Of a stretch of 64,000 bases of DNA, positions 32,546-50,346 are shown piece by piece. Within the stretch, counting starts at the first letter, position 1. Each line of letters starts with the position of its first letter. The position numbers were made by a program, and so were the translations under genes. The notes beneath the pieces were generated by a model. That model was not told where the DNA came from, did no database searches, and worked only from the letters and a program-made list of their open reading frames with translations. The DNA lies in IMG/VR virus record IMGVR_UViG_3300023184_000025, positions 281,155 through 345,154 of that record; one strand, written 5' to 3'.

Positions 32546-32836
32546 TTATATCCATCCTCCTGCTCTAACAATACCAATTACACCAACTAGGATCCAAAAA
32601 GCATTTAACAGCGTATATGCTGGATCTTTCTTTAGTTTGGCACAATATGTTAACAGTACAGCATCGATAGTGTTAAAGACCCAAACAAACATAAACGGAC
32701 TTGAAGGTCCTAACCATGACACCAAACTAAAACTGATAATACGCATGATAACCCCAACCATTTCCATTTGTGGAACATGCGATTTAATATAATTCAAAAC
32801 AAAATTCATTTTTATTTCCCCCACCCATTTCCCCAT
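32546..32836 (-). CDS. small membrane protein
   Basis: Three hydrophobic segments. Confidence 0.6.
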   Translation of the reverse strand: MGKWVGEIKMNFVLNYIKSHVPQMEMVGVIMRIISFSLVSWLGPSSPFMFVWVFNTIDAVLLTYCAKLKKDPAYTLLNAFWILVGVIGIVRAGGWI

Positions 32837-33696
32837 AAGTCAACGTGTAGCCTAGGGCTGTAGTAATAACCTCGACTGCATGCCCAATCTGCTACACGAA
32901 CACGATTCTGCGCATAAGGAGTAACCACACCACCCTGTGGCATAACGTAAACTACACCGGTAAATCCACCTGCTCTAAACTCTTTGACTGCACGTTCTAC
33001 TTCAACAAAGTGAGCGTCTGTTTCAACCACAAACTTGAGATATACTGTGCCCAGTGCTTGATAGCTGGCAACAATGTCTGGACAAATTGCTTCTTCCCAA
33101 CTCTCACCACTGGCACTGAGTTTGGCACTGACGCTAAACGTAACAAACCGATCTTGCTTGGTACCAAGTGCAGGTTGTTGCCAAGCTTGTAAAAAATCTC
33201 TGAATCCTGTTTGTAATTTCTGAGTGCCGTTGGTTTCAAATGTAATGTTACACAGGTCATTCATGCTTGGATTACTAATCAATTCCTCATACGCACGTTG
33301 CCAACCCAACAACGGCTCACCACCTGTGATAACCAAATGTACATCATTGCCATTATCTTGTACCCATTTATTGTTAGGCGTAAGTTTTAACATATCTGCA
33401 ATTAATTGTGCAGTTTCAAATGTTGGACTCAGATGTTTAAAATCTGGATGCCAACTAGCATAGCTGTCACACCCTGTATTAACCAGCGGAAGACTAAGGA
33501 AGTCTTTGTACAAATGTACTTGTTTGGCAACTTCATCTGCTTCTGTGCTTTTTACTCCTGGCGCACATCCAAAACCTGAGCAGGTAAAGTTACAGCCGAA
33601 TGTACGCAGGAATACACTGGGTACTCCGACAAAGCGACCTTCGCCTTGTGCTGAATAAAATAGTTCGCTTACTTTTATTTTCATATTATGTTCCAC
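32812..33696 (-). CDS. queE: 7-carboxy-7-deazaguanine synthase (radical SAM)
   Basis: ELFYSAQGEG..VFLRTFGC, CDS, VITGGEPL, ETNGT, SAKL, RLHVDLWG. Confidence 0.88.
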   Translation of the reverse strand: MEHNMKIKVSELFYSAQGEGRFVGVPSVFLRTFGCNFTCSGFGCAPGVKSTEADEVAKQVHLYKDFLSLPLVNTGCDSYASWHPDFKHLSPTFETAQLIADMLKLTPNNKWVQDNGNDVHLVITGGEPLLGWQRAYEELISNPSMNDLCNITFETNGTQKLQTGFRDFLQAWQQPALGTKQDRFVTFSVSAKLSASGESWEEAICPDIVASYQALGTVYLKFVVETDAHFVEVERAVKEFRAGGFTGVVYVMPQGGVVTPYAQNRVRVADWACSRGYYYSPRLHVDLWGNGWGK

Positions 33697-34534
33697 ATGA
33701 TATCAAACACTGATTGTGTGTTAGATCCAGTTTATTATACAGTAATTTGTCAATGCTGTCAAATTTTTCTACAGGAGCAAAAAAACAACAGGTACTTAAT
33801 TTTCCCGATGCGGCTAGATACACCGAGGGCGGAGATAAATGTATACAATTTTTTGGATCAACCACAGTTGACGTTTTTGGCATACGTATCAGATGTTGAA
33901 ATTCTACCGGCGGTAAAAGATCAAATTCCTCACCAGTTCTATAATGTTTGGCCAATTGACGATTGCGATATAATTTAACCAATTTAAAATGTTTAAATCC
34001 TAATTTCTGACTAGTACGTATACAATCTTTAACCTGGTGTTCGTTGTGTGCATATGGTATGAATTGCCAGGTTGCTGTTCCACCAGCTGATATAAATGCC
34101 TTGGCATTTTCAATTACTTTGTTATAGTCCGTACCTTGCCGATATATTTCGTGTACGCCTTCTAGTCCATCTATACCAAACCAAATATCATGATTAATAT
34201 CAGTTAATAAATTTGCTAAATCTTTCCACCATGCAGTAGTTCTTAAGCTACCGTTGGTATGTATTTGTATTTTTTGAGTGTGCGGTTTAGCAAGTTTAAT
34301 CAATTCAATAAAATTGTGAGCTATCACTGGATCACCGTAGTTTCCGCAAAATTGTATGCCTTCCAACATTGGCAGTCGATTTAAAATATCAGCCAACTGA
34401 TCAGTTTCAAGATCTTGTTCAACCAGTCCTGGCTTCAATCCATATCCATTGTTGTTTCTAGGACAAGCTGGGCACCAAGCATTACATTTTGAACTAGCTT
34501 CAACGTGAAGCCATTTAATGTCACTGGCTTTCAT
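33686..34534 (-). CDS. radical SAM protein with C-terminal twitch/SPASM-like Cys
   Basis: CNAWCPAC, GNYGDP, HTNGS. Confidence 0.8.
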   Translation of the reverse strand: MKASDIKWLHVEASSKCNAWCPACPRNNNGYGLKPGLVEQDLETDQLADILNRLPMLEGIQFCGNYGDPVIAHNFIELIKLAKPHTQKIQIHTNGSLRTTAWWKDLANLLTDINHDIWFGIDGLEGVHEIYRQGTDYNKVIENAKAFISAGGTATWQFIPYAHNEHQVKDCIRTSQKLGFKHFKLVKLYRNRQLAKHYRTGEEFDLLPPVEFQHLIRMPKTSTVVDPKNCIHLSPPSVYLAASGKLSTCCFFAPVEKFDSIDKLLYNKLDLTHNQCLISCGT

Positions 34535-34799
34535 ATATGGTTGACCACTGCTGTAGTTTTTTTCTTTTATTTTGAACAGCGGCTTGTATACTAGCATCAT
34601 CGAGAATTTTAAGTTCTCTAAGCAATTCAACCATGCATAGCACATCGCCTACTTCTTCGCACAACAATTCTCTATTAGACATGCCACGTTTTAAATGAGT
34701 TTCATCTATGCCAAATCTACGTATCTTGCTTACAATTTGTATAACCTCAGCACATTCTTCCTGGAGGATATCCATCACTTCGTTTATTTTCGAGTTCAT
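34521..34799 (-). CDS. MazG-like NTP pyrophosphohydrolase domain protein
   Basis: LQEECAEVIQ..EEVGDVL. Confidence 0.75.
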   Translation of the reverse strand: MNSKINEVMDILQEECAEVIQIVSKIRRFGIDETHLKRGMSNRELLCEEVGDVLCMVELLRELKILDDASIQAAVQNKRKKLQQWSTIYESQ

Positions 34800-34820
34800 A
34801 AGTTTGATATTTCTTTTAAA

Positions 34821-35018
34821 TTATCGTTGACCCTGTGCAATCAGTCTATTAACCACATTGAGATCAAACTCTAAACTAACAATTTTATTTTTAAGTGCTT
34901 GATATTCTTCACTGTGTACATCTTTATCATGCGTTACAATGTCAAAGTACATGTCCGCGACTTCTGCGTGTAGTTTTCTAATATCATATTCTAACAACTC
35001 TCGTCTATCTGCTAACAT
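34821..35018 (-). CDS. hypothetical coiled-coil protein (65 aa)
   Basis: ORF. Confidence 0.6.
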   Translation of the reverse strand: MLADRRELLEYDIRKLHAEVADMYFDIVTHDKDVHSEEYQALKNKIVSLEFDLNVVNRLIAQGQR

Positions 35019-35027
35019 ATACTTTCC

Positions 35028-35798
35028 TTATAACTTCTTTGCTTTTATTAAAAGATGCCAGCCTAGATATTCTTTAACTGCTTCTCTCATTACTTCGGGC
35101 ATTGCTTCAAACCATGGTTCAAGTTCAAAAATTCCCTGCTTATATTTTTCTACATTGTACATAAAGCAATGACTCTGTCGTAAGCGTAACAAATCAAAAT
35201 CTTCTCTAAGCAATTCGTGTATCTCTTCAGCAGTATATGCTTCTGCATATGGACAATTTGCTTGTGCTTCAAACTGATCCAGCCCTTTACGAATCATGGC
35301 ATACTTCCAGGAGTTTTTGGCGTAGACCATAAACCTAAACTCGCCATCGTGTTTTAACAAACTGGCAACAGTTTTAATATGATCTTGCATGCCAGGATAA
35401 TGATGCAGTACCCCGTAGCTGTAGACTAAATCAAATTGTCCCAAGTCCAGTACTTTAGGGTCAGTAATATCAATATTGTGAAAACCACCTTCGAGATCAT
35501 AAACATTAAATCTTTGTTTGCACAGATCTAAACTAGCATCTGACAGATCAATACCTACATACTCGGCACCGTGACGAGCAAACTGTTCTGCATCTGTGCC
35601 AATACCACATCCAATTTCTAATACACGTTTACCTCTCCATTGATGGAATCCAGCAAAGTCAAGGATGTGTGGTTCAGAACGATATCTTTTGCTTGTTACT
35701 TCGTCAAAGTACTGGTCAGAGCCAATGGGCGCACTACTATGCCCAACATTACACGGTTGTGTATTCCAGTAGTCAAGAATTCTTTTTTGTAAATCCAT
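35028..35798 (-). CDS. class I SAM-dependent methyltransferase
   Basis: VLEIGCGIG, GIDLS, FDLVYSYGVLHH. Confidence 0.88.
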   Translation of the reverse strand: MDLQKRILDYWNTQPCNVGHSSAPIGSDQYFDEVTSKRYRSEPHILDFAGFHQWRGKRVLEIGCGIGTDAEQFARHGAEYVGIDLSDASLDLCKQRFNVYDLEGGFHNIDITDPKVLDLGQFDLVYSYGVLHHYPGMQDHIKTVASLLKHDGEFRFMVYAKNSWKYAMIRKGLDQFEAQANCPYAEAYTAEEIHELLREDFDLLRLRQSHCFMYNVEKYKQGIFELEPWFEAMPEVMREAVKEYLGWHLLIKAKKL

Positions 35799-35800
35799 AA

Positions 35801-36643
35801 TTAATTAAATTTTGCCATTTGTTTATTTGGGTCAAACTCGCCAAGCATTCTAATCCAAGGGTCTTGTTTGCCTGCTAACACATTCATAAACCAACTAACA
35901 TCTTCACCTCGAGCATGCATAAACCAAGCAATTTGTCTAGCATCTAAAAAGCGTTGTCGACGATATTCAAAGTGATTAAAGTCTCTAGGGTCTTCTGGTC
36001 GTCCTTCGTACATGATTCTCTTCTGGAAAGTTTCGTCGTTGTTATTACCAGTTAGGTCGTGACGATCATGCAAGACATCAACCGAAATAGTTTCCATAAT
36101 ATTTAAGATATAGGCAATTTGACTAATCCATGCGTCCGAAAGTTGGTGTGCGCTTAGATAATTAAACAACATTAACCATTCTTTTGGAACAATCGGAAAT
36201 ACAGCATAAGGATGCTCGTTGTGAGTGGGCATTCTTAGCACACGAAACTTACCGTTGTGCTCTTTTATTCGACTGTCCCAGCCCTGTGTTTTCATAAGTG
36301 CATCGTCATTCCAGAACATTAGCCAACGTGCATTACTTTTTTTAGCCAGTTCTGTAACATATTCATTTAAACGAGTGTAACCAACTGGTTTAAATTCTAA
36401 TATTGACGTCGAAATACCCCGACTATCAAATTCTTTAAAAACGTTTGCCGCCGCCCACTCAATGGAGTCTTTGTCGTCTTCATCCATGCCTAGTAAAATT
36501 TGTATTGATTTTACATCATCGGCCAGGTCAATCAAGCTGTTAAGACTATCAAGCAATGCAGTTGTGCGTCCACGGGTGGGCAACAACACAGCCACATCAT
36601 ATTTTGGTTCCAAAATTAAAGCTGGTATTTCAATCAATTTCAT
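35801..36643 (-). CDS. GT-A (family 2-like) glycosyltransferase
   Basis: VLLPTRGR, MFWNDD, DAWI. Confidence 0.7.
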   Translation of the reverse strand: MKLIEIPALILEPKYDVAVLLPTRGRTTALLDSLNSLIDLADDVKSIQILLGMDEDDKDSIEWAAANVFKEFDSRGISTSILEFKPVGYTRLNEYVTELAKKSNARWLMFWNDDALMKTQGWDSRIKEHNGKFRVLRMPTHNEHPYAVFPIVPKEWLMLFNYLSAHQLSDAWISQIAYILNIMETISVDVLHDRHDLTGNNNDETFQKRIMYEGRPEDPRDFNHFEYRRQRFLDARQIAWFMHARGEDVSWFMNVLAGKQDPWIRMLGEFDPNKQMAKFN

Positions 36644-37173
36644 TCAAATAAATCCTCATTCCATTCTCTATGGCCTTCTCTAAAAGCCATGTTTGCTTGT
36701 GTTTCACGCACTTCCACTCGGTAGCACCATAAACGACTTGCTTCGTACTCTCCCCAAAAGTCAGGAATGTAAACACCGTTAACATACTTGTACAGCATGT
36801 CTGCAAGTGATTCACATCCAACTCTGGGCAAGATTGTGAGCTTGGCCAGTTTCCGACGTTCCATTTCCTTGTAGAACTCCAGTTCAGGATCATCGGCACT
36901 GACCAAGGTAGTGTGATCAAATTGATCTTCTAATATCTTTTTAAGTTCTTTGAGACCACCATAGTCGGCTGCCCAGTTACGAACATCAAGATTGTTTGTA
37001 CCAAAGTAAAATTTCATACTAAACGAATAACCATGATTCAAATTACAATGACTATCGGCCCTCCACTGTCTGTAAGCGCACGGAAATGCGTCAATGTACT
37101 CTTTGGTACTGGTAAACTTGTAGGTTACCGGTTGATACTCTTGCTTGACTACTGCGTTAAAATTGTCTGACAT
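36640..37173 (-). CDS. queD: 6-carboxytetrahydropterin synthase (QueD/PTPS family)
   Basis: HCNLNHGY, DYGGLK, FDHTTL, CESLA, VEVRET. Confidence 0.8.
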   Translation of the reverse strand: MSDNFNAVVKQEYQPVTYKFTSTKEYIDAFPCAYRQWRADSHCNLNHGYSFSMKFYFGTNNLDVRNWAADYGGLKELKKILEDQFDHTTLVSADDPELEFYKEMERRKLAKLTILPRVGCESLADMLYKYVNGVYIPDFWGEYEASRLWCYRVEVRETQANMAFREGHREWNEDLFE

Positions 37174-37191
37174 GCTGTTTCTCCTATGTTA

Positions 37192-37221: not shown

Positions 37222-37256
37222 GCGGGATGAATGCCAAAAAGACCGCTGAAGCTTGA

Positions 37257-37958: not shown

Positions 37959-37961
37959 ATA

Positions 37962-38645
37962 TTAATTCCTTTTACACGCATTAACAATATTCATAAACTC
38001 ATTGCGTACTGCTGGATCACTCTTGAATACTCCGCCAAGTTTGCTAGTGACTGTTGACGATCCTGTGTCTTCTACACCACGACTTTTTACACAGTAGTGT
38101 TGAGCATCAATGACCACTGCAATGTCGTCAGTTTCAAGAATATACTGTAATGCATGATACACTTGTTCTGTCAACCGCTCCTGAATTTGTGGGCGTTTGC
38201 TAAAGTATTCAACCACACGATTGATCTTTGACAAGCCCAACACCTTTTGTTTGGGAATGTAACCCACAGTTGCTAAACCATCAATCACAACAAAGTGATG
38301 TTCGCAGTTGCTTTGTACGTTGACATTACGCTCGATAACCATTTCATCGTACTTCATCTTGTTGTCAACTGTGGTACACTTTGGAAATGCTTCGTAATCT
38401 AGACCCCAAAAAATTTCATTCACATACATCTTGGCCACACGTTTTGGTGTGTCCATTAGACTATCATCACTGAGGTCTAATCCCAGCACCTCCATGATAT
38501 GCTTAAAGTCTTTTTCAATCAATTCAATTTTATCTTTACGATCAACTGCATGTTGAAAAGTAGGAGTTTCTACACCGCACTTGACCAAGTGGTTGTGTAC
38601 TAATAGACCCAATTCAGGGTCGCATTTTGTTTTGTTATATGACAT
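37962..38645 (-). CDS. folE: GTP cyclohydrolase I
   Basis: DTPKRVAK, SNCEHH, LGLSKINR, RPQIQERLT, HYCVKSRG. Confidence 0.95.
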   Translation of the reverse strand: MSYNKTKCDPELGLLVHNHLVKCGVETPTFQHAVDRKDKIELIEKDFKHIMEVLGLDLSDDSLMDTPKRVAKMYVNEIFWGLDYEAFPKCTTVDNKMKYDEMVIERNVNVQSNCEHHFVVIDGLATVGYIPKQKVLGLSKINRVVEYFSKRPQIQERLTEQVYHALQYILETDDIAVVIDAQHYCVKSRGVEDTGSSTVTSKLGGVFKSDPAVRNEFMNIVNACKRN

Positions 38646-39284: not shown

Positions 39285-39881
39285 TTAATCCTCAATGGTT
39301 ATTTGTCTACAGTCTGGATATTCAACATACACGGGTTGCGGCCAATTAACCTTAATTATGTTGAGTAGATCCATACCAATTTCTGCTTCTTCTATGGTGG
39401 GCTTGTAATGATAACCCACTTTGAAAACCTGCTGTGATTCCCATGGCTTGATAGCTAAGTCTCTGCCATCGTAGCGTTGAGCCAACATGATATCGTAGGC
39501 TTCAACATCATCCAGCAAAATAGCACCACCACGACCAATGTGAAGTGGCTTGCCATGCCCAAAGCTCAGGCAGGTCAATGTGTCTGGGCGATACATATCT
39601 TTTTCAAGTCTGCGAGCACTATCCCAGATGCGTGTGCCAAGGAATGAATACTCTCCTACCCAACGTTGCCAAGCATGATCAAGATACTCATATTTGATAC
39701 CTAACTTGTGCATGGTCATTGGAATACTCAAGTAAGTGTAAGGAGTAAACTTGCACTCCTTGACTTGATCATATCGCAAACAAAGTTCAATGGCATGTGT
39801 ACAGCAATCAGTCATGATTGCATATGGTGCACCGGTAAACTCTGCTAGAGCTTGTTCAAATTTTAATATTTTGTCAAACAT
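39285..39881 (-). CDS. truncated DegT/DnrJ/EryC1-like PLP aminotransferase
   Basis: CCTHAIEL, WDSAR, SFGHGKP..GRGG; start at MFDKIL. Confidence 0.7.
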   Translation of the reverse strand: MFDKILKFEQALAEFTGAPYAIMTDCCTHAIELCLRYDQVKECKFTPYTYLSIPMTMHKLGIKYEYLDHAWQRWVGEYSFLGTRIWDSARRLEKDMYRPDTLTCLSFGHGKPLHIGRGGAILLDDVEAYDIMLAQRYDGRDLAIKPWESQQVFKVGYHYKPTIEEAEIGMDLLNIIKVNWPQPVYVEYPDCRQITIED

Positions 39882-41754: not shown

Positions 41755-42445
41755 TTTTTGATTTTTTTATATAATTGTAAATATGCTCTGACCATATTTG
41801 GTGACCGTAATCATTAAGATGACAATCATTTTTACTTATCGCAACATTGTTGTCAACAATGAAATCCAACATGTATCCAGCACCAGCAAGTTTTAAATCT
41901 TGTGTACTTTCTTTGCTGAAATAAAAAGGAATATAAGTTCCTGGACACCGCAATTTTACACTATCAGTATAACTTAAAAAATTGCAAGTTTGTTCATATA
42001 ACGAATAATAATTGTCAAACCAATTATCATAAAAATTAATCCCAGTTGATGTAGGAGTTAGTGTCGACCATTTTTTTTGTGTATTAAGAAAATTGTTGTC
42101 ACTGCGAAATAACTGTTTTGTTTTGGTGGTATACACTAAACTTTTTTTGATAGCTTCTGTGTGTACTGGGTTATCATTGTCAATGATAAACGATTTGCGT
42201 GAAGGGTGACTCCATCCAATTATTACCAAATCGTTGTCTGTGATTCTGTTGAGATTTTCTAAAAACGTATGATAAATGAAAAAATTATCTGCTCCTGCTT
42301 GAGCATAATTTTCGTACTCTATATTTAGCTTTTTACTAAGAAGATTGGGCCATCCTGATTCGGGTGACCCAATATTGTAAGGCAAGGACATACTTTGTCC
42401 AAATACCCAAAGTTTACTGTTTTCTGTTGTACCAAAGCCAGGCAT
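41747..42445 (-). CDS. SGNH-like protein
   Basis: VFGQSMS, GADN, DCHLN..GH. Confidence 0.55.
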   Translation of the reverse strand: MPGFGTTENSKLWVFGQSMSLPYNIGSPESGWPNLLSKKLNIEYENYAQAGADNFFIYHTFLENLNRITDNDLVIIGWSHPSRKSFIIDNDNPVHTEAIKKSLVYTTKTKQLFRSDNNFLNTQKKWSTLTPTSTGINFYDNWFDNYYSLYEQTCNFLSYTDSVKLRCPGTYIPFYFSKESTQDLKLAGAGYMLDFIVDNNVAISKNDCHLNDYGHQIWSEHIYNYIKKSKNA

Positions 42446-43391: not shown

Positions 43392-44584
43392 TCAACTTTC
43401 CTAACTTTGTATTTTGCCCCTGCAACATGATCACGATATCGATTACCTGCACGATTCCACTGCTCTCCTTTGCCTTCCATGATATCACAGATTCTATCAA
43501 TGGTTCCATTGTTCCAGTCGCTGATAAGACCAATATTATGATGAGATTTTTCTAATAGATTATTAAGTTTCCTAACTACATCATCCTCACTCCAGGGAAT
43601 GTACAGACGGTCTAGGTCGTTGGCAAATGTTTCTGGAAAACTACGATAAGCAGGGTAAAGCACATTAGCGCCAAGTGTGTCAGCTTCTGAAACTGTGTTT
43701 GATACCCAGTCTTGAAGAGCACAATTGAAAAGAACACGAGTGTCATTAAGAAGAGAGTAATACTCATTTTTAGTTAAGTTTTCATGAATCTCAAGTAATC
43801 CACTAGCCTGTAATTTGCGAGCACGTTTTACATAATTATTATTGTTTGATCGCAACGGACCTCCAGAGAAGATAGCAAAGCTAATCTGAGGCTGTTCTTC
43901 TTGAACACGTTCAGCCAGGTCCATAAAGAAACCTGGTTGCTTCTCCTGGTCAAATCTTGCGGCAAACCCTACCCGCATTTTACGATCGGCAAATGGTCGG
44001 ATATTTGCTGTGCCACCTATGCGTTCTAACACTTCTTCTTTGCCAAATGCCAAGCCGCTAATATTGTAGATAGGTGCAGTCCAATTGGCAATACGCATGT
44101 GGGCTACCATTTCTTCGTTGGTAGCCAGTACACCTGTAACAAATTCATTGACCATTTGTTCATACAAACTCATCCACTTGCCCATGCCCCATACATGTAC
44201 AAAGTCGTCAGGATCAATAGCCTGTGCCAGACAACGAACATACACACGAGGTCTTTGTTCTGTTGGAATTTGATTCATGATATAAGGCAAGCTTTCAATG
44301 CCTGGCTGGAACATGTCTTCAAAGTACACAACATCTTTTCCTGAGCATTCACCATTGCGCATCAGCTGTACAAGATTCATCATCTGACTCATGCCAAAGT
44401 AACTGCGCCCGTGTGCGTCCAGGACCTGACCTACACTAATACTTTTAGTGTTGTCAATGGTAGATCCAGGAACATACACTACATCAATACCTCGACGTTC
44501 AAATACACGTCGATTCCATTCAGTAAGTTGTAGTGTGTAGCGGGCTTCGTATGACTCCAGACCCATGTAAAATAGTTTCCTCAT
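43388..44584 (-). CDS. GT-B glycosyltransferase (possible DNA/base glycosyltransferase)
   Basis: GFAARFDQEKQP, NTVSEADTLG..PAY..FPE GT-B signature. Confidence 0.7.
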   Translation of the reverse strand: MRKLFYMGLESYEARYTLQLTEWNRRVFERRGIDVVYVPGSTIDNTKSISVGQVLDAHGRSYFGMSQMMNLVQLMRNGECSGKDVVYFEDMFQPGIESLPYIMNQIPTEQRPRVYVRCLAQAIDPDDFVHVWGMGKWMSLYEQMVNEFVTGVLATNEEMVAHMRIANWTAPIYNISGLAFGKEEVLERIGGTANIRPFADRKMRVGFAARFDQEKQPGFFMDLAERVQEEQPQISFAIFSGGPLRSNNNNYVKRARKLQASGLLEIHENLTKNEYYSLLNDTRVLFNCALQDWVSNTVSEADTLGANVLYPAYRSFPETFANDLDRLYIPWSEDDVVRKLNNLLEKSHHNIGLISDWNNGTIDRICDIMEGKGEQWNRAGNRYRDHVAGAKYKVRKVE

Positions 44585-44593: not shown

Positions 44594-44800
44594 TTAAGGT
44601 CTAGTGTCAGCAGTCCACATGTCCTTGGCGTTTTTGCCCTGGGCATGTTTGCTGTGTTGTTGCCAGGCATAACTTTTCCAGTTATACAAATCGGACTCGT
44701 TGTAACGATACCCAAACCTAATACAAAAATCTAGAAATTTTTCTAGCTCTTCAAAAATTTGATTAAGACGAGGGTTGGGTTTAAATGTAGGCTTGGCCAT
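44594..44800 (-). CDS. hypothetical protein (68 aa)
   Basis: ORF with GGAA RBS. Confidence 0.65.
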   Translation of the reverse strand: MAKPTFKPNPRLNQIFEELEKFLDFCIRFGYRYNESDLYNWKSYAWQQHSKHAQGKNAKDMWTADTRP

Positions 44801-44811
44801 ACTGTTTCCTA

Positions 44812-45255
44812 TTAAATTTTAATTGACAAACTAGGGCGAGAAATTTCATATTTGATCAAAGCGCCGTTCTCACCATCTTCGGCCACTTCAATCCAGACCG
44901 CACGGTCAGGATACCTTTCGGCAATCTGTGTGTACAAGTCATCACTGATCATTTCACAACTTTTAAAGTTGAGTTCTAGCGTTCCGCCAGCATACAGTTT
45001 CTCCAACCAGCGTTTGAACTGGATGAATTCAATATCGCGATCATTATGAAAAACATCGATCCAAACTCGGAAATGGAATATGTGTCGATGAGGTACCCCA
45101 AGAAAAGACACATCATATTCATCACCGGTCGCCAGTGTTGGATCACTAGCGGCAGCAGGGTACTTGTGGATTCCTTCTTTGCGAAATGTGATCCAGATTT
45201 TTCGTTCTGCATGTTGTTTGATTCTTTCCACTTGTTCTCTTTGCTCTTGGTTCAT
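44812..45255 (-). CDS. second QueD/T-fold paralogue, DpdL-like
   Basis: LGVPHRHIF (LxxxHRHxF), DRDIEFI, SCEM, EDGENG. Confidence 0.65.
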   Translation of the reverse strand: MNQEQREQVERIKQHAERKIWITFRKEGIHKYPAAASDPTLATGDEYDVSFLGVPHRHIFHFRVWIDVFHNDRDIEFIQFKRWLEKLYAGGTLELNFKSCEMISDDLYTQIAERYPDRAVWIEVAEDGENGALIKYEISRPSLSIKI

Positions 45256-45706: not shown

Positions 45707-45707
45707 T

Positions 45708-46193
45708 TCAAGTTGGAAACGGCCAAGCATTGCTGGGCTCAGGTTTTGGTTTTAATTTAACATTTTCTTCAATGACCTTTCCAGTTAGTTCGTCGCATAA
45801 ACTAACTTGGTATGGTGCAATAACATGTACCGCGGCATCTTCTTCTTGCCAATCATGTTCACCGTCATACAACCAGGCTGAGCCACCTTTGTGATATGCT
45901 TCATGGATAGCTTCACGTTCTTCCTGATCTAGGTCGTCGCTAAATTCAAATTCAATGCTAATGCTGTCATCAAACTCACAACCCCAACCTGCGTCAGATT
46001 TACAATAGGCAACAGGCATACCTTCATAGGGCAAGTTAACATCCATACCTGCTTCAATAAAACCTTGTCCCCAGCGATAGGTTTCATCTATGTTAAACCA
46101 ACTGATGGAACCATCCGCATTTTCTCGGAACATTTCTACATGGTAGACAATGCTTTTCTTTTCCAGTGGCTTGATCAAGTAGACTCTAGACAT
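45708..46193 (-). CDS. acidic hypothetical protein (161 aa)
   Basis: ORF ending NAWPFPT. Confidence 0.7.
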   Translation of the reverse strand: MSRVYLIKPLEKKSIVYHVEMFRENADGSISWFNIDETYRWGQGFIEAGMDVNLPYEGMPVAYCKSDAGWGCEFDDSISIEFEFSDDLDQEEREAIHEAYHKGGSAWLYDGEHDWQEEDAAVHVIAPYQVSLCDELTGKVIEENVKLKPKPEPSNAWPFPT

Positions 46194-46195
46194 AA

Positions 46196-46888
46196 TTATT
46201 TCCTATCGCCAAACAGTTGTAACAAGTTTAAGAACAAGTTGATAAAGTCCATGTACAATGTTAGCGCACCGCCGACTTCGGCTGCCGGGCTAGTGTCTAC
46301 ACTGAGCTCTTCGCGAATCTTTTGTGTGTCATAGGCAGTTAGTCCCAGGAAGATAATGATAGCCAGTGCGGAGATCACCATCTGCATCACGGTGCTGCCA
46401 ATAAAGATATTAACGATACTGGCAATGCAGATGGCGATCAACCCCACAATCATAAACTTACCCATGCTATCTAAACTACGTTTGGTAAAATAGCCATAGC
46501 CACTCATGACACTAAACAATATAGCCGCGCCCATAAAGGCACTAACAATACTGCCCATGGTAAACACAGCGAAGATTGTAGCAAAACTCAATCCCATGAG
46601 TGCCGCAAAGCCATGTAAGCATAACTGTGCTACACTCTTGCTAGGGTTATTAGCTAATACCATACTAACGCCAAAGATTGCCGCCAATGGTGCAAAAATA
46701 ACAATCCACTTTAGCATGCCGGTAAAAAAGAATGCCAGCAACTCTGGACTAGTGCCTACAAAGTAACTAACAATCATTGATACAATGACTGCAAGGCTCA
46801 TGTGTCCATACACACGACCCATAGCAGAGTTAATTTCATCTGCTGAACGGTAAGGCAAGTTGTTGCCTGTATAAGTTGTTCCAAACAT
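46196..46888 (-). CDS. Bax inhibitor-1/YccA family membrane protein
   Basis: Seven TM helices, YDTQKI, LYMDFINLFLNLLQLFG. Confidence 0.92.
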   Translation of the reverse strand: MFGTTYTGNNLPYRSADEINSAMGRVYGHMSLAVIVSMIVSYFVGTSPELLAFFFTGMLKWIVIFAPLAAIFGVSMVLANNPSKSVAQLCLHGFAALMGLSFATIFAVFTMGSIVSAFMGAAILFSVMSGYGYFTKRSLDSMGKFMIVGLIAICIASIVNIFIGSTVMQMVISALAIIIFLGLTAYDTQKIREELSVDTSPAAEVGGALTLYMDFINLFLNLLQLFGDRK

Positions 46889-46889
46889 T

Positions 46890-47306
46890 TTATGCTACCT
46901 CATCTTTCTTATCACTGGGAAACTTTGCACTAGTATATCGAATAACCAATACACTGACGGCAATAACAAATGTAGAACCAGCCACGGACAACATCTCAAT
47001 AATGTCAATGGGCTGGTGACTCATGATGTCTACCATGTGCCTGGTCAATGCAGTTATTGCTATGTAAAGTAAAAATCTAACAGGCATATGATTGGTTCTA
47101 AAATAAATCCCAACCATAGCACCTATTTCCAAATAGATAAACATCAGCAATAGGTCACCGACTGTGGCATGGTGCTTTTGAAACATTTCAAAAAACGTCC
47201 AACCGGCGGCCCATACCGTGGCGGCACCGATACCAAACAGAGCCAATCGGTGAAATATGTCCACCAACGTGTTTCCTATCCGATCTACTATTTCTGTTTT
47301 TAACAT
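46890..47306 (-). CDS. psiE: phosphate-starvation-inducible PsiE-like protein
   Basis: LLMFIYLEI..YF..H.PVRFLLYIAITALTR. Confidence 0.85.
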   Translation of the reverse strand: MLKTEIVDRIGNTLVDIFHRLALFGIGAATVWAAGWTFFEMFQKHHATVGDLLLMFIYLEIGAMVGIYFRTNHMPVRFLLYIAITALTRHMVDIMSHQPIDIIEMLSVAGSTFVIAVSVLVIRYTSAKFPSDKKDEVA

Positions 47307-47328
47307 TTTGCCACCGAGTAGTTTTTCC

Positions 47329-47850
47329 TTACAGGTGCTTCATTACATTTTCAGGACTAGAAACACCATAAGGATCTGGATCACTTGCACTTGATTCTGG
47401 CTCTATAAACATGTGTTCTACTAGGCCGTTGTTAACAACTGCGGCATAGCGACGACTGCGTTTGCCAAAGCCAATAGCACTCATATCAACTGTCATGCCC
47501 ATGCCTTCTGTAAACGCACCTGCTCCGTCTGGAATAACCTGAACGTTCTTGATGTTTAGCGCACGAGCCCATTCGTTCATAACAAAGCCATCATTAACAC
47601 TGACGCAATAGATTGCATCGATGCCCTTGGCTTTGAAGTCATTATACTGTTCTTCGAAGCCGGGTAGTTGATATGTTGAGCAAGTGGGTGTAAATGCACC
47701 CGGTAAGCTAAACACTACTACTCGCTTGTTGGCAAATAAATCATTGCTTGTTTTAAAAACAAAGTCCCCACCAATTGGGCAGCCGCCTCCCTCTGGTGCT
47801 TCATCTCCTTCGCGAAATGCGAATGTTACGTTAGGTATATTGTGTGTCAT
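47329..47850 (-). CDS. peroxiredoxin (Prx5/PGdx type)
   Basis: LPGAFTPTCS, SVNDGFVM, RSRRYA. Confidence 0.92.
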   Translation of the reverse strand: MTHNIPNVTFAFREGDEAPEGGGCPIGGDFVFKTSNDLFANKRVVVFSLPGAFTPTCSTYQLPGFEEQYNDFKAKGIDAIYCVSVNDGFVMNEWARALNIKNVQVIPDGAGAFTEGMGMTVDMSAIGFGKRSRRYAAVVNNGLVEHMFIEPESSASDPDPYGVSSPENVMKHL

Positions 47851-47861
47851 AATAATTTTCC

Positions 47862-48053: not shown

Positions 48054-48063
48054 TTTTAATTCC

Positions 48064-48606
48064 TTATTTAAAAGTTAAATCATTTTTGTACTGAGTCCAA
48101 TCAGTAAATGTTTCACGCCTTGTTAACTCGTGCAGACTATGACACCAGACTCCTGGATTAGTGGCGGCAAAGTCTTTGTCATCTAATTTAATTGTAGCAT
48201 TGTATCCCAGTTGTTGGATATAAGGTAATTTAACACTGATCATTGGAATAAACAAATTGTGTTCAACTAACCCACCTTCTAAAAGTCCTTCAACATTTTG
48301 TTGTGTAATGTCAAGCGTACACCAGTATCCTAGGTCTAAAAAGTATTGAACTAGTTTTTCCCAAGGATTCCAGAAAATAGCATCATTGGTTCCGATATGA
48401 ATCGGAAAACTCATATTGGCACCAAAATAAATGTGCTTTATATGTTTGTCTAAATCCGGTTGGCTGTTTTGCACGTCTAGGATTTCCTTGATAGCACCAG
48501 GAGACTGTAATCCTACTACAAAAAGAGTATTTGTTCCGTAAGCAGGAGTGTGCTCGACTTCTTTGCCAAAGAAGAACTTGGTATTATTGTGGCCTTCTCT
48601 ATTCAT
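48064..48606 (-). CDS. hypothetical protein in the dpdA operon (180 aa)
   Basis: Coupled ORF; EVEHTPAYG, HIYFGAN. Confidence 0.7.
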   Translation of the reverse strand: MNREGHNNTKFFFGKEVEHTPAYGTNTLFVVGLQSPGAIKEILDVQNSQPDLDKHIKHIYFGANMSFPIHIGTNDAIFWNPWEKLVQYFLDLGYWCTLDITQQNVEGLLEGGLVEHNLFIPMISVKLPYIQQLGYNATIKLDDKDFAATNPGVWCHSLHELTRRETFTDWTQYKNDLTFK

Positions 48607-48809
48607 TGTTCGTCATCCCAGGGGATCTCTTGCTCGTATTCGTATTGTTGTTTGCGTAATGCTGACAGTTGATCTAAAACTGTTAGTTTTTGCTTTTTAA
48701 GATTTTGCATCAACTCGTCAGTATATACACCTGACTTTTCTAGTGTGTCGATCTTATCATGGAGTACACGGTGTGACTCCTCAAGCATGCGAATTTTTCC
48801 CTTGTACAT
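48603..48809 (-). CDS. DUF465/YdcH-like small helical protein
   Basis: LEESHRVLHDKI..LKKQKL..LDQL. Confidence 0.6.
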   Translation of the reverse strand: MYKGKIRMLEESHRVLHDKIDTLEKSGVYTDELMQNLKKQKLTVLDQLSALRKQQYEYEQEIPWDDEQ

Positions 48810-50346
48810 TTAAATTCTCCAATTGATCTAAAAGTGATTCATCAAACTCTTCTGATGATGGTGTGCTTTCAACTTCAAATAAGTTATTAAATTGAGTATG
48901 TGCGTTAGTTGTTTTCTTACCAGTAAACCCTCTAGTACCAATGATCTGATCCCAAAACTTTGAATTTTGATTAATTAAATCAATGCTCTTTTGTCTATCT
49001 TTGAGGCTGAAGATTTTATCTACTAAGTCTCTAAATTTTACACGATCAAAGGTTTCTCGGACAAGCATTCCGGGCAATAAGCCTGTATCATATTGCCTAT
49101 TTGCTTCCTGTACTGCTCGAATATGGTGCCAGACATTGTGCCCCATCATTAGAGCATAGCTAAAACTATCCCATGACGTACGACCTTCTTTACCAATCTT
49201 ATTTAGGTCGCCTGGCTTATAGATACAAACATCTTTGATAGCCATTCTTGAACTAATTGGACTGTCTTCAAACAAGCTATGTACTTTGTCCTGTATTACT
49301 GCATCTCTAAAACTTCTTGTATCCGTAGCATACTTTTTATCATCAGCAGTTGGTTCCATTTGATAAGACCACTTGCCTCTATCTTCCACACGTAGATTGG
49401 TGTAGATTTGTCCATTGGCTGTGGCAAGGAAAGGACTGGCACAATCAAAGCTGATGGTAAACTTGGGATTGTGATAACGCCTAACTGCACGTTGAACATC
49501 TGTAAGCAAACAAGCCCACTCAAGCTTACTTGTGCCTAAAAAGTGCATCCAATCATGCAAGCCTTCTTCTAATAAGCCATCATGAATTAGTGTAATTAAT
49601 CTTTTTAGAACCAAGTGAACATCGCACATATTTTGACCACCCATACCCCAGCCATTGAATGGTCGTTCGTATTTGGAAGGATTGCAGTAGTCTTTCATCA
49701 AACCGTACCAGTGGTCGGCTTCTCCATGATTACCACCTTGCAGTACATTTAGAATCTTAACATCACCGTGTCTGTTTTTAATCCAGTATTCATTGTTGTA
49801 TTTTGTAGCATTAACTGCATCGTCATAGCTGAAGATACCACAGGCAGCCGCGGCTTTTGGATCACGGAATGTCCAAGTTGGAATATCCATGGTCATTCCG
49901 TATGTGCCTATGCCACATTGCCATTCTAATACTGCTCTGCGTTTTTTCTCTGCGGCTTTGTCTGTGGGATCAGCCCACTTGCCCGGCCACACACCCTTGG
50001 CAATTTGAAACCCGCCTGAGTCCAGAACCATAATACTGTTTGGATCTCTGTTACGAACCATGTCTTCTTTTGGATCTATCTTGGTCAGGTCTAAGTTAGC
50101 ATGACCCGCTGAGTAAAGACTGTACTTGTATGGAAATAAACCTTTTTGGGGATTAAGCCAATTAAGAGATTCCATATCAGGAATTGCTTTAGGCATACGT
50201 GCTGGTTCAATATATTGTTCAGTGCGTTGCCTGCCCACATACGAAGCATAGAAACTACTAATAGCAGGCAAAAATACAGCATAGTCACTTTGCTGTGCTG
50301 TTAGATTGTCCTGCGTGACTGAGCTATTATTTTCTTTAAGATCCAT
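48781..50346 (-). CDS. dpdA: guanine transglycosylase (TGT fold), DpdA-like DNA 7-deazaguanine insertase
   Basis: LDSGGFQ, MTMDIP, NVLQG, GWGMGG, HFLGTS, SFDCASP, distal HN; longer than bacterial tRNA TGT and no CxCxxC. Confidence 0.7.
   Translation of the reverse strand: MDLKENNSSVTQDNLTAQQSDYAVFLPAISSFYASYVGRQRTEQYIEPARMPKAIPDMESLNWLNPQKGLFPYKYSLYSAGHANLDLTKIDPKEDMVRNRDPNSIMVLDSGGFQIAKGVWPGKWADPTDKAAEKKRRAVLEWQCGIGTYGMTMDIPTWTFRDPKAAAACGIFSYDDAVNATKYNNEYWIKNRHGDVKILNVLQGGNHGEADHWYGLMKDYCNPSKYERPFNGWGMGGQNMCDVHLVLKRLITLIHDGLLEEGLHDWMHFLGTSKLEWACLLTDVQRAVRRYHNPKFTISFDCASPFLATANGQIYTNLRVEDRGKWSYQMEPTADDKKYATDTRSFRDAVIQDKVHSLFEDSPISSRMAIKDVCIYKPGDLNKIGKEGRTSWDSFSYALMMGHNVWHHIRAVQEANRQYDTGLLPGMLVRETFDRVKFRDLVDKIFSLKDRQKSIDLINQNSKFWDQIIGTRGFTGKKTTNAHTQFNNLFEVESTPSSEEFDESLLDQLENLNVQGKNSHA

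What the first reader, a model, noticed from the sequence alone, without database searches (positions are those of the whole stretch)
32812..50346. 7-deazaguanine DNA modification pathway with no queC but a DpdL-like second QueD
Seen: folE, queD, queE, a large TGT-fold gene and a second T-fold gene with LGVPHRHIF; no queC or queF in 64 kb. Known: FolE-QueD-QueE make 7-carboxy-7-deazaguanine (CDG), DpdA inserts 7-deazaguanines into phage DNA, and a QueD paralogue (DpdL) is proposed to decarboxylate CDG to give dDG. From memory, DpdL carries an LxxxHRHxF-type motif. Inference: the genome carries dDG or dCDG as anti-restriction armour. The alternative is that the TGT acts on the phage's own GUN tRNAs (Asn, Asp, His and Tyr are all encoded here).
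Basis: partly seen in the sequence, partly recalled or inferred. Interest (0 to 1): 0.72.

Follow-up and report, generated by a model that had tools for sequence, protein, structure and literature searches.

The report
Deazaguanine DNA-modification cluster with sugar genes
A 345-kb freshwater jumbo phage carries a complete gene set for replacing guanine in its DNA with a 7-deazaguanine base, using a very divergent base-swapping enzyme and a conserved sugar-adding enzyme, so the final base may be more elaborate than any measured so far.

Summary
FolE (37962-38645), a phage-type QueD (36640-37173), QueE (32812-33696), a DpdL homologue carrying LGVPHRHIF (44812-45255) and a 521-aa TGT-fold protein (48781-50346) are all present. 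QueC, QueF, Pfam TGT, DpdA2 and DpdA3 are absent from the whole 345,154-bp genome.

The 521-aa protein matches no sequence library. Its AlphaFold model matches only TGT-superfamily structures above the generic TIM-barrel level. Profile-profile comparison ties it to DpdA2 (96%). It keeps the three aspartates that TGT and DpdA share.

It sits beside the sliding clamp and DNA polymerase. In other phages, relatives sit next to QueC/QueF or DpdL genes. This favours DNA over tRNA as the target.

New here: a GT4 glycosyltransferase (43388-44584) next to DpdL, followed by GalE and a short DegT-like enzyme. Among 13 cultured DpdL phage lineages, this glycosyltransferase is present in all 7 with DpdA2 or this new family. 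It is absent from all 6 with DpdA3.

dDG has been measured only in the DpdA3 class. A 7-deazaguanine DNA modification is therefore well supported, but its identity (dDG, dCDG or a glycosylated derivative) is open.

The parts
52070..54730 (-). Family B DNA polymerase, upstream end of the conserved block
   Evidence: NCBIfam DNA polymerase II/pol2 hits, best 4.8e-38. Present in 64 of the 80 related IMG/VR loci, at a median 76% identity.
51129..52073 (-). Conserved 314-aa protein of unknown function between polB and the clamp
   Evidence: Found in 60 related loci. No Pfam or NCBIfam hit.
50362..51093 (-). Sliding-clamp-like protein (243 aa)
   Evidence: An HMM built from 68 relatives hits Phosso XYS97379, annotated 'DNA polymerase III sliding clamp beta' (1.2e-51), PA5oct EST35_0314 and Vibrio 2.275.O gp465. 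PHROG 12062, 6.9e-29.
48781..50346 (-). Divergent DpdA-like guanine transglycosylase (521 aa, P0001), the only TGT-superfamily gene in the genome
   Evidence: AF2 model pLDDT 89.3. The Foldseek PDB top 50 are all Z. mobilis TGT, E about 5e-7. VIA-align: ArcTGT Z 17.4, QTRT2 16.4, TGT 15.5, DpdA 7ui4 15.1, Cap10 14.1, then generic TIM barrels at 11.7 or less. hhalign against ACP17 DpdA2 gives 96%, E 1.5e-9; against nt-1 DpdA2 93%. D109, S110, G112, H268, G271 and D301 are invariant and D154 is conserved in at least 90% of 48 diverse homologues. Single copy in the genome.
48064..48606 (-). Conserved 180-aa protein of unknown function; in most relatives it lies directly between the DpdA-like gene and DpdL
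   Evidence: Found in 73 related loci, at a median 295 bp upstream of DpdL. An HMM hits ACP17 ASD50402, the gene just upstream of ACP17 DpdA2, at 4.9e-23. No family found in Pfam, PHROGs, NCBIfam or the Atlas.
45708..47850 (-). Lineage-specific insert splitting the operon: redoxin (47329-47850), PsiE (46890-47306), Bax1-I family membrane protein (46196-46888) and a 161-aa unknown (45708-46193)
   Evidence: Pfam hits 2.1e-25, 3.8e-22 and 4e-53. Found in only 0-9 of about 70 related loci that have room for them.
44812..45255 (-). DpdL (QueD-paralogue T-fold protein, proposed CDG decarboxylase); LGVPHRHIF at 45076-45102
   Evidence: 56-58% identical to ACP17 DpdL and 36% to phiST DpdL. H30, H56, H58, H70, E76, C100, E101 and E126 are invariant in 11 family members. 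hhalign against phage QueD gives 87%, E 4e-6. The motif matches LxxxHRHxF as published.
44594..44800 (-). Conserved 68-aa protein between DpdL and the glycosyltransferase
   Evidence: Found in 70 of 78 related loci with room, 16 bp downstream of DpdL. No family found.
43388..44584 (-). GT4-type (GT-B fold) glycosyltransferase genomically tied to DpdL
   Evidence: AF2 model pLDDT 78.6. VIA-align Z 24.1-21 to GT4 enzymes such as sucrose-phosphate synthase, BshA and PimA. Homologues lie beside DpdL in ACP17, PA5oct, X1, BCSR5, Phosso and BUCT-ZZ01 (68% identity). All tblastn hits among 50,697 phage records are DpdL-carrying phages. Found in 63 of 66 related loci with room.
42414..43391 (-). UDP-glucose 4-epimerase GalE; its start overlaps the stop of the glycosyltransferase gene
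   Evidence: NCBIfam TIGR01179 galE equivalog, 285.5 bits against a cut-off of 262.3. Pfam Epimerase 6.2e-49. Found in 47 of 57 related loci.
39874..42445 (-). Variable genes: B12-binding radical SAM C-methyltransferase-like protein (39874-41754) and a 232-aa unknown (41747-42445)
   Evidence: NCBIfam KedN5-family 4.4e-66, below cut-off. Pfam Radical_SAM and B12-binding. Present in only 6 and 1 related loci respectively.
39285..39881 (-). Short DegT/DnrJ/EryC1-like PLP enzyme (about 198 aa if started at the conserved Met; the mechanical ORF runs to 39989)
   Evidence: Pfam PF01041 6e-14, over cut-off. Conservation starts at Met37, and an SFGHGKP motif is conserved. Found in 44 of 47 related loci.
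37962..38645 (-). GTP cyclohydrolase I FolE
36640..37173 (-). Phage-type QueD (CPH4 synthase) with CxxxHGY in place of CxxxHGH
   Evidence: Pfam PTPS 1.9e-14. 49% identical to ACP17 QueD. The HGY/RQW form is invariant in 7 phage QueDs and is shared with phage Iggy, whose DNA carries dPreQ0.
33686..36643 (-). Partly variable genes: 280-aa protein (35801-36643), class I SAM methyltransferase (35028-35798), 65-aa ORF, and a twitch/SPASM-like radical SAM protein (33686-34645)
   Evidence: Found in 23, 6, 1 and 6 related loci respectively.
32812..33696 (-). QueE (CDG synthase)
   Evidence: PHROG 2076 QueE-like, 3e-50. 30% identical over the full length to PA5oct QueE, 2.3e-25. NCBIfam QueE models match only the N-terminal 40-50 residues, below cut-off.

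Best explanation
The block 32812-54730 is a DNA-guanine replacement system built into the replication module of a freshwater jumbo phage. The steps, with their status: (1) FolE, a phage-type QueD and QueE convert GTP to 7-carboxy-7-deazaguanine (CDG). The gene identities are shown; the chemistry is inferred from the established queuosine pathway. (2) With no QueC or QueF anywhere in the genome, CDG cannot become preQ0 or preQ1. DpdL, a QueD paralogue that keeps the metal-binding histidines but replaces the catalytic Cys of CxxxHGH, converts CDG or a near precursor to another base. The published proposal is decarboxylation to 7-deazaguanine, which has never been shown in vitro. (3) The 521-aa TGT-fold protein, a deep relative of DpdA2 with the three catalytic aspartates intact, exchanges guanine in phage DNA for that base, by the covalent Asp-ribosyl mechanism of TGT and DpdA. 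This step is inferred. (4) A GT4 glycosyltransferase, fed by the adjacent GalE (UDP-Gal or UDP-GalNAc) and perhaps a short DegT-like PLP enzyme, belongs to the same functional unit. It probably adds a sugar either to the deazapurine before insertion or to the modified DNA. Its role is inferred from strict co-occurrence only, and the acceptor is unknown. The outcome is DNA that resists host restriction. The core claim (7-deazaguanine in DNA) is strong. The exact end product is open; my rough estimates are plain dDG about 0.35, a glycosylated or otherwise extended derivative about 0.3, dCDG about 0.1.
For: Gene identities. DpdL homology and motif. QueC, QueF, TGT and DUF6610 are absent from the 99%-complete genome, and DpdA2 and DpdA3 HMMs find nothing. 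TGT fold. Homology to DpdA2, with DSGGxQ / D-IP / QG / HxLG / SxD aligned. D109 and D301 are invariant and D154 nearly so, matching the three aspartates reported invariant in TGT and DpdA (PMC10164549). The family is linked to deazaguanine genes in independent contexts: Vibrio phage 2.275.O gp468 beside QueF, YhhQ, QueC and FolE; metagenome contigs with polB, a clamp-like gene, the homologue and QueC, one also with FolE; and PA5oct with polB, clamp, the homologue, GT, DpdL and QueE. PA5oct DNA resists several restriction enzymes, which its authors read as a modified G. The order polB-314aa-clamp-DpdA-like-180aa-DpdL-68aa-GT-GalE-DegT-like-FolE-QueD recurs in the 80 related IMG/VR loci. GT linkage: adjacent to DpdL in 7 lineages, absent from 6 DpdL+DpdA3 lineages and from DpdL-less DpdA2 or P0001-family phages. 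No ThyA-family hydroxymethylase is present to give the GT a hydroxymethyl-pyrimidine acceptor.
Against: No chemistry has been measured for this phage or for any phage of the GT-containing class. DpdL activity has never been shown, and ACP17 DpdL + DpdA gave no dDG in E. coli. The transglycosylase has no invariant cysteine, so the zinc site of canonical TGTs (known to me from the literature, not tested here) is probably missing; its nucleic-acid substrate cannot be read from the fold. Plain 7-deazaguanine offers no obvious hydroxyl for O-glycosylation, so a GT acting on dDG would need unusual chemistry. The fold matches of the GT are generic GT4 and do not reveal the acceptor. The window's own GT scores below Pfam's cut-off (22.3 against 26.4 bits). 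NCBIfam QueE models match only the N-terminus of the QueE candidate.
Confidence: 0.78

Rival explanations
1. The DNA carries plain dDG, as in phiST. The glycosyltransferase, GalE, DegT-like and methyltransferase genes are unrelated passengers, for example glycosylating virion proteins or host envelope, that happen to sit in the same block.
For: dDG is the only product ever tied to DpdL. 7-Deazaguanine has no obvious sugar acceptor group. The B12-rSAM, methyltransferase and second rSAM genes vary among close relatives, and this region does accept unrelated inserts, such as the redoxin/PsiE/Bax1-I island. GT fold matches are generic.
Against: The GT is adjacent to DpdL or the DpdA-like gene in seven distantly related phage lineages with different hosts. 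Every tblastn hit among 50,697 phage records is a DpdL phage. It is absent from all six DpdL+DpdA3 lineages. It is kept at the same site in 63 of 66 relatives, even where the allele is only 24% identical. Chance passengers would not show this pattern.
Confidence: 0.33
2. The TGT-fold enzyme modifies the phage's own GUN tRNAs (Asn, Asp, His, Tyr) at position 34 with a deazaguanine, not DNA.
For: All four GUN tRNAs are encoded in the window. By structure the protein is as close to tRNA enzymes (ArcTGT Z 17.4, TGT 15.5) as to bacterial DpdA (15.1).
Against: Its nearest family by profile comparison is DpdA2, shown to insert preQ0 and preQ1 into DNA. The gene sits beside the clamp and polB in this clade, PA5oct, Vibrio 2.275.O and two metagenomic contigs, the same arrangement as the DpdA of phage Iggy. 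The phage cannot make preQ1, which from my own knowledge is the substrate of bacterial tRNA TGT. PA5oct DNA shows restriction resistance attributed to a modified G.
Confidence: 0.06
3. FolE, the two T-fold proteins and the GT4 make a glycosylated pterin, as in cyanobacterial tetrahydrobiopterin glucoside, and not a DNA base.
For: The GT model matches the UDP-glucose:tetrahydrobiopterin glucosyltransferase of Synechococcus PCC 7942 at Z 21.1. The closest cultured-phage GT homologue (68% identity) is in a phage of that host. FolE plus PTPS-family enzymes is the pterin route (established knowledge).
Against: That Z score lies within the generic GT4 range (ranks 1-30 span Z 24-18.6). QueE (CDG synthase) and a TGT-superfamily enzyme are conserved parts of the same block and have no role in pterin glycoside synthesis.
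Confidence: 0.04

Closest known systems
DpdL-type dDG system of Cellulophaga phage phiST (FolE-QueD-QueE-DpdL-DpdA3; Hutinet et al. 2023, PMC10516641)
   Same: Same QueC-less route (FolE, phage-type QueD, QueE) and a DpdL with the LxxxHRHxF motif and the same invariant His/Glu set.
   Different: phiST uses the 259-aa DpdA3. It has a MazG-like enzyme and a P-loop protein beside DpdL, and no glycosyltransferase. This window has a 521-aa DpdA2-like enzyme, a GT4, GalE and a DegT-like enzyme, and no DpdA3. Only phiST-type DNA has been measured.
DpdA2 transglycosylases (Vibrio phages nt-1 and VH7D; Acidovorax phage ACP17)
   Same: The catalytic core aligns by profile-profile comparison, with DSGGxQ, D-IP, QG, HxLG and SxD conserved (96% and 93%). 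ACP17, X1, BCSR5 and BUCT-ZZ01 also pair DpdA2 with DpdL and the same GT4 family.
   Different: No BLAST- or HMM-level similarity: tblastn of P0001 finds no DpdA2 phage, and a DpdA2 HMM finds nothing in this genome at E <= 1. Pairwise identity is about 20%. The protein is about 100 aa longer, with a distinct helical C-terminal part.
PA5oct (Wroclawvirus) EST35_0316-0322 cluster
   Same: Same transglycosylase family (34% identity), the same GT4 family, DpdL and QueE, next to the clamp and polB. Its DNA resists several restriction enzymes, read as a modified G.
   Different: Gene order differs (the GT lies between DpdA-like and DpdL). There is only a 172-aa GalE-like fragment. A PRTase-like gene is present that this genome lacks. 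Neither paper that mentions PA5oct together with 7-deazaguanine names a transglycosylase, DpdL or GT.
Bacterial tRNA-guanine transglycosylase and bacterial DpdA (PDB 7UI4)
   Same: TIM-barrel TGT fold (Z 15-17). Three conserved aspartates in the same order.
   Different: No Pfam TGT match. No invariant cysteine, so probably no zinc site. Sequence identity is 12-16% in the structural alignments.

Membership tests
DpdL (QueD-paralogue, proposed CDG decarboxylase) | LxxxHRHxF in place of QueD's CxxxHGH | tested here: met
   LGVPHRHIF at residues 52-60. The motif definition is read from PMC10516641. L52, H56, H58 and F60 are invariant in 11 members.
DpdL (QueD-paralogue, proposed CDG decarboxylase) | Sequence homology to the named DpdL proteins of phiST and ACP17 | tested here: met
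   tblastn gives 55.8% identity, 3e-40, to ACP17 and 36.4%, 3e-10, to phiST.
DpdL (QueD-paralogue, proposed CDG decarboxylase) | T-fold / PTPS-family relationship | tested here: inconclusive
   hhalign of DpdL against the phage QueD alignment gives 87%, E 4e-6, over the C-terminal half only. The best PDB profile hit is P. horikoshii PH0634 at E 0.41. There is no direct Pfam PTPS hit. The paper reports 99.9% by HHpred. No structure was predicted here.
DpdL (QueD-paralogue, proposed CDG decarboxylase) | Occurs with FolE, QueD, QueE and a DpdA but without QueC | tested here: met
DpdL (QueD-paralogue, proposed CDG decarboxylase) | CDG decarboxylase activity | not testable with these tools
   Also unproven in the literature.
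DpdA / TGT superfamily | TGT-type TIM-barrel fold | tested here: met
   Model pLDDT 89.3. The top five non-redundant PDB matches are ArcTGT, QTRT2, TGT, DpdA and Cap10 (Z 17.4-14.1), against 11.7 or less for other TIM barrels. Foldseek probability is 1.00 to TGT.
DpdA / TGT superfamily | Three conserved active-site aspartates (general acid/base, base recognition, nucleophile) | tested here: met
   D109 and D301 are invariant and D154 is conserved in at least 90% of 48 homologues. They align with DSGG, FDEIP and SYDS of DpdA2. The criterion is from PMC10164549. Equivalence to individual TGT residues is at motif level, not by superposition.
DpdA / TGT superfamily | Match to Pfam TGT (PF01702) | tested here: not met
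   No hit even at E <= 10. The named DpdA3 of phiST also has none.
DpdA / TGT superfamily | Acts on DNA rather than tRNA | not testable with these tools
   Only context supports it: the replication-module position, the DpdA2 relationship and the PA5oct restriction data.
DpdA2 subfamily | Direct sequence similarity to nt-1, VH7D or ACP17 DpdA2 | tested here: not met
   tblastn of P0001 against phages returns only its own family. tblastn of ACP17 DpdA2 does not return PA5oct or Phosso. A DpdA2 HMM gives no hit in this genome. The only signals are a weak pairwise blastp hit, E 0.005, and the profile-profile matches.
DpdA3 subfamily | Similarity to phiST gp042 and its relatives | tested here: not met
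   hhalign gives 70% over 85 columns only. A DpdA3 HMM finds nothing in the genome. Foldseek to phiST M4SLA5 gives E 3.3e-3.
DpdA4 (DUF6610) | Match to PF20314 | tested here: not met
   No match in the genome.
QueD (CPH4 synthase) | PTPS domain and the CxxxHGH signature | tested here: inconclusive
   PF01242 is over cut-off, but the signature reads CNLNHGY. The same HGY form is invariant in 7 phage QueDs and occurs in Iggy, a phage with dPreQ0 DNA, so it is probably a functional phage variant.
QueE (CDG synthase) | QueE-specific N-terminal motif plus radical SAM cluster; family model match | tested here: inconclusive
   PHROG QueE-like 3e-50 and full-length homology to annotated phage QueEs. 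NCBIfam QueE equivalogs reach only 34-41 bits against cut-offs of 200-300. The cysteines are spaced CX3CX4C in the translation.
GT4 glycosyltransferase (GT-B fold) | GT-B two-Rossmann fold and Glycos_transf_1 C-terminal domain | tested here: met
   Z 24.1-21 over 310-340 residues to GT4 enzymes. PF00534 gives 22.3 bits for the window protein, below the 26.4 cut-off, but 45.5 and 26.5 bits for the X1 and BUCT-ZZ01 homologues.
GalE | NCBIfam equivalog TIGR01179 over cut-off | tested here: met
   285.5 bits against 262.3.

The most novel reading that the evidence does not exclude
Phages that pair DpdL with a DpdA2-like transglycosylase, including this abundant freshwater jumbo-phage clade, PA5oct, ACP17 and a Synechococcus phage, do not stop at dDG. 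Instead they carry a glycosylated 7-deazaguanine derivative in their DNA, possibly galactose-derived and in some lineages amino- or methyl-tailored. The GT4 would be the missing component that prevented reconstitution in E. coli. This would be the first sugar-bearing purine in DNA. The variable tailoring genes and the two deep GT alleles would then reflect an arms race with modification-dependent nucleases.
Probability: 0.28. Interest if true: 0.88.

Novelty: new variant of a known kind. Interest (0 to 1): 0.63.

Why it matters
7-Deazaguanine DNA modifications are a main way for phages to escape restriction and some CRISPR systems. The DpdL branch is the least understood: its enzyme activity is unproven and reconstitution has failed.

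This window shows that DpdL systems come in two genomic classes. Only one, the DpdA3 class without a glycosyltransferase, has been chemically characterised. The other class always carries a GT4 glycosyltransferase. In this clade it also carries GalE and a PLP enzyme. This class is widespread: more than 7,800 metagenomic homologues of both the transglycosylase and the GT were found (lower bounds, since only 8,000 candidates were scored per search), and it includes the therapeutic-candidate phage PA5oct.

That gives a concrete, cheap experiment with cultured phages. It could reveal a new DNA base, explain the failed reconstitution, and define the target of modification-sensing defences such as END nucleases. 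It also adds a deep branch to the DpdA family that standard HMM libraries miss, so surveys of phage DNA modification are probably undercounting it.

Tried and rejected
1. Megablast of 36000-50400 against 50,697 phage records gave no match.
2. The 521-aa protein had no hit in Pfam, PHROGs, NCBIfam, PADLOC, PDB sequences, or PDB with a 48-sequence profile. Only structure and profile-profile methods worked.
3. The supplementary tables of PMC10516641, which may already list PA5oct-type proteins under some DpdA subgroup, are not held. I cannot exclude that this family was already binned there.
I did not resend those rows. I built A5 from window, protein-search and IMG/VR sequences instead.
5. The Atlas look-alike search for the GT listed bacterial QTMAN_N (tRNA-queuosine mannosyltransferase-like) clusters at ranks 32-43. 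hmmscan found no PF12038 match in the GT or its homologues, and fold matches are generic GT4, so I treat this as a lead only.
6. The Atlas search for the 180-aa protein gave no usable hit.
7. Sequencing runs: 23 runs hold the stretch (freshwater and lake metagenomes), but all are kept as assembled contigs, none as raw or nanopore reads. Signal or error patterns at G could not be examined, and read laying was not used.
8. The context look-ups for P0141, P0202 and P0229 gave short or integrase-flanked contigs with no informative neighbours.
9. A nucleotide-level route through a phosphoribosyltransferase was considered, because BUCT-ZZ01 and PA5oct have PRTase-like genes in their clusters. This genome has no PF00156 match.
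10. A T4-like sugar acceptor on hydroxymethyl-pyrimidines was considered. No ThyA-family gene is present.

Full report
**Source and setting**

The window is the last 64 kb (281155-345154) of a 345,154-bp IMG/VR virus record judged 99% complete. It holds 28 tRNA genes and a tmRNA. GC is about 40%, and nearly all genes are on the minus strand. The same stretch occurs in freshwater and lake metagenomes. No cultured phage is close at the DNA level.

**Check of the observation**

- FolE (37962-38645) is an equivalog-level match.
- The PTPS-family gene (36640-37173) passes Pfam's cut-off and is 49% identical to the annotated QueD of Acidovorax phage ACP17.
- The QueE candidate (32812-33696) matches the PHROG QueE family at 3e-50. 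It is homologous over its full length to annotated phage QueEs, although NCBIfam's bacterial QueE models match only its N-terminus.
- The 147-aa protein (44812-45255) carries LGVPHRHIF.

Hutinet et al. 2023 state that QueD's CxxxHGH becomes LxxxHRHxF in DpdL. The protein is 56% identical to ACP17 DpdL and 36% to phiST DpdL, the two proteins that paper names. An alignment of 11 family members keeps H30, H56, H58, H70, E76, C100, E101 and E126 invariant. It relates to phage QueD by hhalign at 87%.

QueC, QueF, Pfam TGT and DUF6610 (DpdA4) have no match anywhere in the genome, while the same searches ring in control genomes.

**The 'large TGT-fold gene'**

The 521-aa protein (48781-50346) gave nothing in Pfam, PHROGs, NCBIfam, PADLOC or PDB sequence searches, even with a profile. 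It nevertheless belongs to a very large family:
- at least 7,882 homologues in the 90%-clustered collection;
- 933 clusters at 50% identity;
- many on contigs of 200-350 kb.

An AlphaFold2 model built on 48 diverse homologues is confident (pLDDT 89.3, pTM 0.89).
- Foldseek's top 50 PDB hits are all Zymomonas TGT (E about 5e-7, probability 1.00).
- An exhaustive non-redundant comparison puts five TGT-superfamily entries on top: archaeosine TGT Z 17.4, QTRT2 16.4, bacterial TGT 15.5, the DNA preQ0 insertase DpdA 15.1 and Cap10 14.1.
- Unrelated TIM barrels follow at Z 11.7 or less.

So the fold claim holds, but structure alone does not separate a DNA enzyme from a tRNA enzyme.

Profile-profile comparison does better:
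- 96% (E 1.5e-9, 176 columns) to ACP17's DpdA, which I showed to be a DpdA2;
- 93% to Vibrio phage nt-1 DpdA2, an enzyme shown to put preQ0 into DNA;
- only 70% over 85 columns to phiST DpdA3.

The aligned blocks are DSGGxQ, D-IP, QG, HxLG and SxD. D109 and D301 are invariant and D154 nearly so. This corresponds to the three aspartates that Gedara et al. report as invariant in both TGT and DpdA: general acid/base, base recognition and nucleophile. No cysteine is invariant, so a TGT-like zinc site is unlikely.

A DpdA2 HMM does not find this protein at all. It is therefore a deep, separate branch nearest DpdA2, not a member in the ordinary sense.

**DNA or tRNA?**

Context favours DNA.
- In 80 related IMG/VR loci the usual order is polB, a 314-aa protein, a sliding-clamp-like protein, the DpdA-like gene, a 180-aa protein, DpdL, a 68-aa protein, the glycosyltransferase, GalE, a DegT-like gene, FolE and QueD.
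- The polB-clamp-transglycosylase arrangement recurs in PA5oct and in two metagenomic contigs, where the neighbour is QueC. In Vibrio phage 2.275.O the homologue sits near a clamp-like gene and beside QueF, a YhhQ-type transporter, QueC and FolE.
- Phage Iggy, with proven dPreQ0 DNA, also has DpdA next to the clamp and polymerase.
- The family therefore travels with three different deazaguanine pathways, always near replication genes.
- This phage cannot make preQ1, which from my own knowledge is the substrate of bacterial tRNA TGTs.

I put the tRNA alternative at about 6%.

Immediately downstream of DpdL lies a 398-aa protein (43388-44584).
- It has weak Glycos_transf_1 similarity.
- Its model is a GT-B fold matching GT4 enzymes at Z 21-24.
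- Its gene overlaps a GalE equivalog (42414-43391).
- A short DegT-like PLP enzyme with a conserved SFGHGKP motif follows further downstream in this window, and directly after GalE in most relatives.

Homologues of this glycosyltransferase lie next to DpdL or the transglycosylase in ACP17, PA5oct, Xanthomonas X1/BUDD, Burkholderia BCSR5, Sinorhizobium Phosso and Synechococcus phage BUCT-ZZ01 (68% identical). Every tblastn hit in 50,697 phage records is a DpdL-carrying phage.

Whole-genome searches give a clean split of the 13 cultured DpdL lineages:

| Class | Lineages | Glycosyltransferase |
|---|---|---|
| DpdL + DpdA3 | phiST group, MA9V-3, Ahp1, D479, Bakedbeans, RHph_I1_18 | absent in all 6 |
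| DpdL + DpdA2 | ACP17, X1/BUDD, BCSR5, BUCT-ZZ01 | present in all 4 |
| DpdL + this new family | PA5oct group, Phosso, this window's clade | present in all 3 |

The glycosyltransferase is also absent from DpdL-less phages that have DpdA2 (nt-1) or the new family (Vibrio 2.275.O). These lineages are not statistically independent, but seven against six with no exception is hard to ascribe to chance.

Within the window's own clade the glycosyltransferase is kept in 63 of 66 loci with room. Ten loci carry an allele only 24% identical at the same site. GalE (47 of 57) and the DegT-like gene (44 of 47) are also conserved.

Other genes in the block are rare among relatives: the B12-radical-SAM methyltransferase-like gene, the class I methyltransferase, the second radical SAM gene and several unknowns. 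A redoxin/PsiE/Bax1-I island is a window-specific insertion that splits the operon.

**Mechanism**

The steps and their status:
- Shown at the level of gene identity: GTP to CDG by FolE, QueD and QueE.
- Shown: no route to preQ0 or preQ1.
- Inferred from the literature: DpdL converts CDG, proposed to be a decarboxylation to 7-deazaguanine.
- Inferred from fold, motifs and context: the DpdA-like enzyme swaps G in DNA for the product.
- Inferred from co-occurrence only: the GT4, supplied by GalE, takes part in the same pathway.

What the GT4 glycosylates cannot be read from the sequence or the fold.
- The best matches include enzymes with small-molecule acceptors (BshA, MshA, a pterin glucosyltransferase) and T4 alpha-glucosyltransferase on DNA. 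All lie within the generic GT4 range.
- The genome has no ThyA-family hydroxymethylase, so a T4-like hydroxymethyl-pyrimidine acceptor is unlikely.
- It has no phosphoribosyltransferase either.

dDG has been measured only in the DpdA3 class. [quoted passage not shown] The end product in this class is therefore open.

**Comparison with what is known, and novelty**

A QueC-less, DpdL-containing deazaguanine system is known since 2023, and predicted deazaguanine use by jumbo phages is mentioned in a 2026 review. The following are new relative to the texts I could read:
1. a transglycosylase family that standard libraries miss, nearest DpdA2 and embedded in the replisome module;
2. the strict DpdL / DpdA2-like / GT4 association, which the Hutinet paper does not mention (no occurrence of 'glycosyl' or 'sugar');
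3. the extension by GalE and a PLP enzyme in an abundant freshwater clade.

I could not read that paper's supplementary tables, so point 1 may be partly anticipated there.

I rate this a new variant of a known kind, with interest 0.63. The most novel reading still allowed is a sugar-bearing deazaguanine in DNA. I give it a probability of about 0.28; it would be a notable finding if true.

Noticed in passing
window 6746-7079 and 12454-26838: The phage encodes a tmRNA (tag ANDEQFALAA) and 28 tRNA genes covering nearly all amino acids, all on the minus strand.
   Followed up: no
window 45708-47850: A four-gene island (redoxin, PsiE, a Bax1-I family membrane protein and a 161-aa unknown) is inserted between the 180-aa gene and DpdL. 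It is absent from nearly all of about 70 related loci, where those two genes are adjacent.
   Followed up: partly
window 36640-37173; L104:3989-4447; alignment A4: The phage QueD proteins examined read CxxxHGY and (F/Y)RQW where bacterial QueD has CxxxHGH. By my recollection of the E. coli QueD sequence (not fetched here), the RQW stretch replaces an upstream His as well, so two of the three canonical zinc histidines appear replaced. The form is shared with phage Iggy, whose DNA carries dPreQ0.
   Followed up: partly
L063:10687-11760, L030:9061-10236 and eight other IMG/VR loci: Ten of 76 close relatives carry, at the same position after DpdL, a glycosyltransferase of the same family that is only 23-24% identical to the window's. 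That is two deep alleles at one locus.
   Followed up: partly
L012:8212-9363 (Vibrio phage Bakedbeans gp176); L014:8431-9312 (Chryseobacterium phage MA9V-3): In these two phages DpdL is the C-terminal domain of larger proteins (383 and 293 aa). Their N-terminal parts have no Pfam match and are not similar to each other.
   Followed up: partly
L006:2748-3209 (BUCT-ZZ01) and L001:12946-13380 (PA5oct EST35_0321): A protein annotated xanthine-guanine phosphoribosyltransferase in BUCT-ZZ01 has a homologue (E 4.5e-10) inside the PA5oct DpdL cluster. This hints at a nucleotide-level step in some GT-containing systems. This genome has none.
   Followed up: partly
L007:3197-4809 (Xanthomonas X1) and L010:10276-12114 (BCSR5): X1 and BCSR5 share three further genes just upstream of their glycosyltransferase: a PAPS-reductase-family protein and two unknowns. 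These are not found in the window.
   Followed up: no
window 39285-39989: The mechanical ORF for the DegT-like gene starts at a TTG and overlaps the B12-radical-SAM gene by 116 nt. Conservation among 46 relatives begins at Met37, so the likely start is 39881.
   Followed up: yes
L015:13844-14473 (Vibrio phage 2.275.O gp471): This phage carries a YhhQ-type transporter (PF02592 in the record's own annotation), which I recall as the queuosine-precursor transporter family. It sits between QueF and QueC, next to its member of the new transglycosylase family.
   Followed up: no
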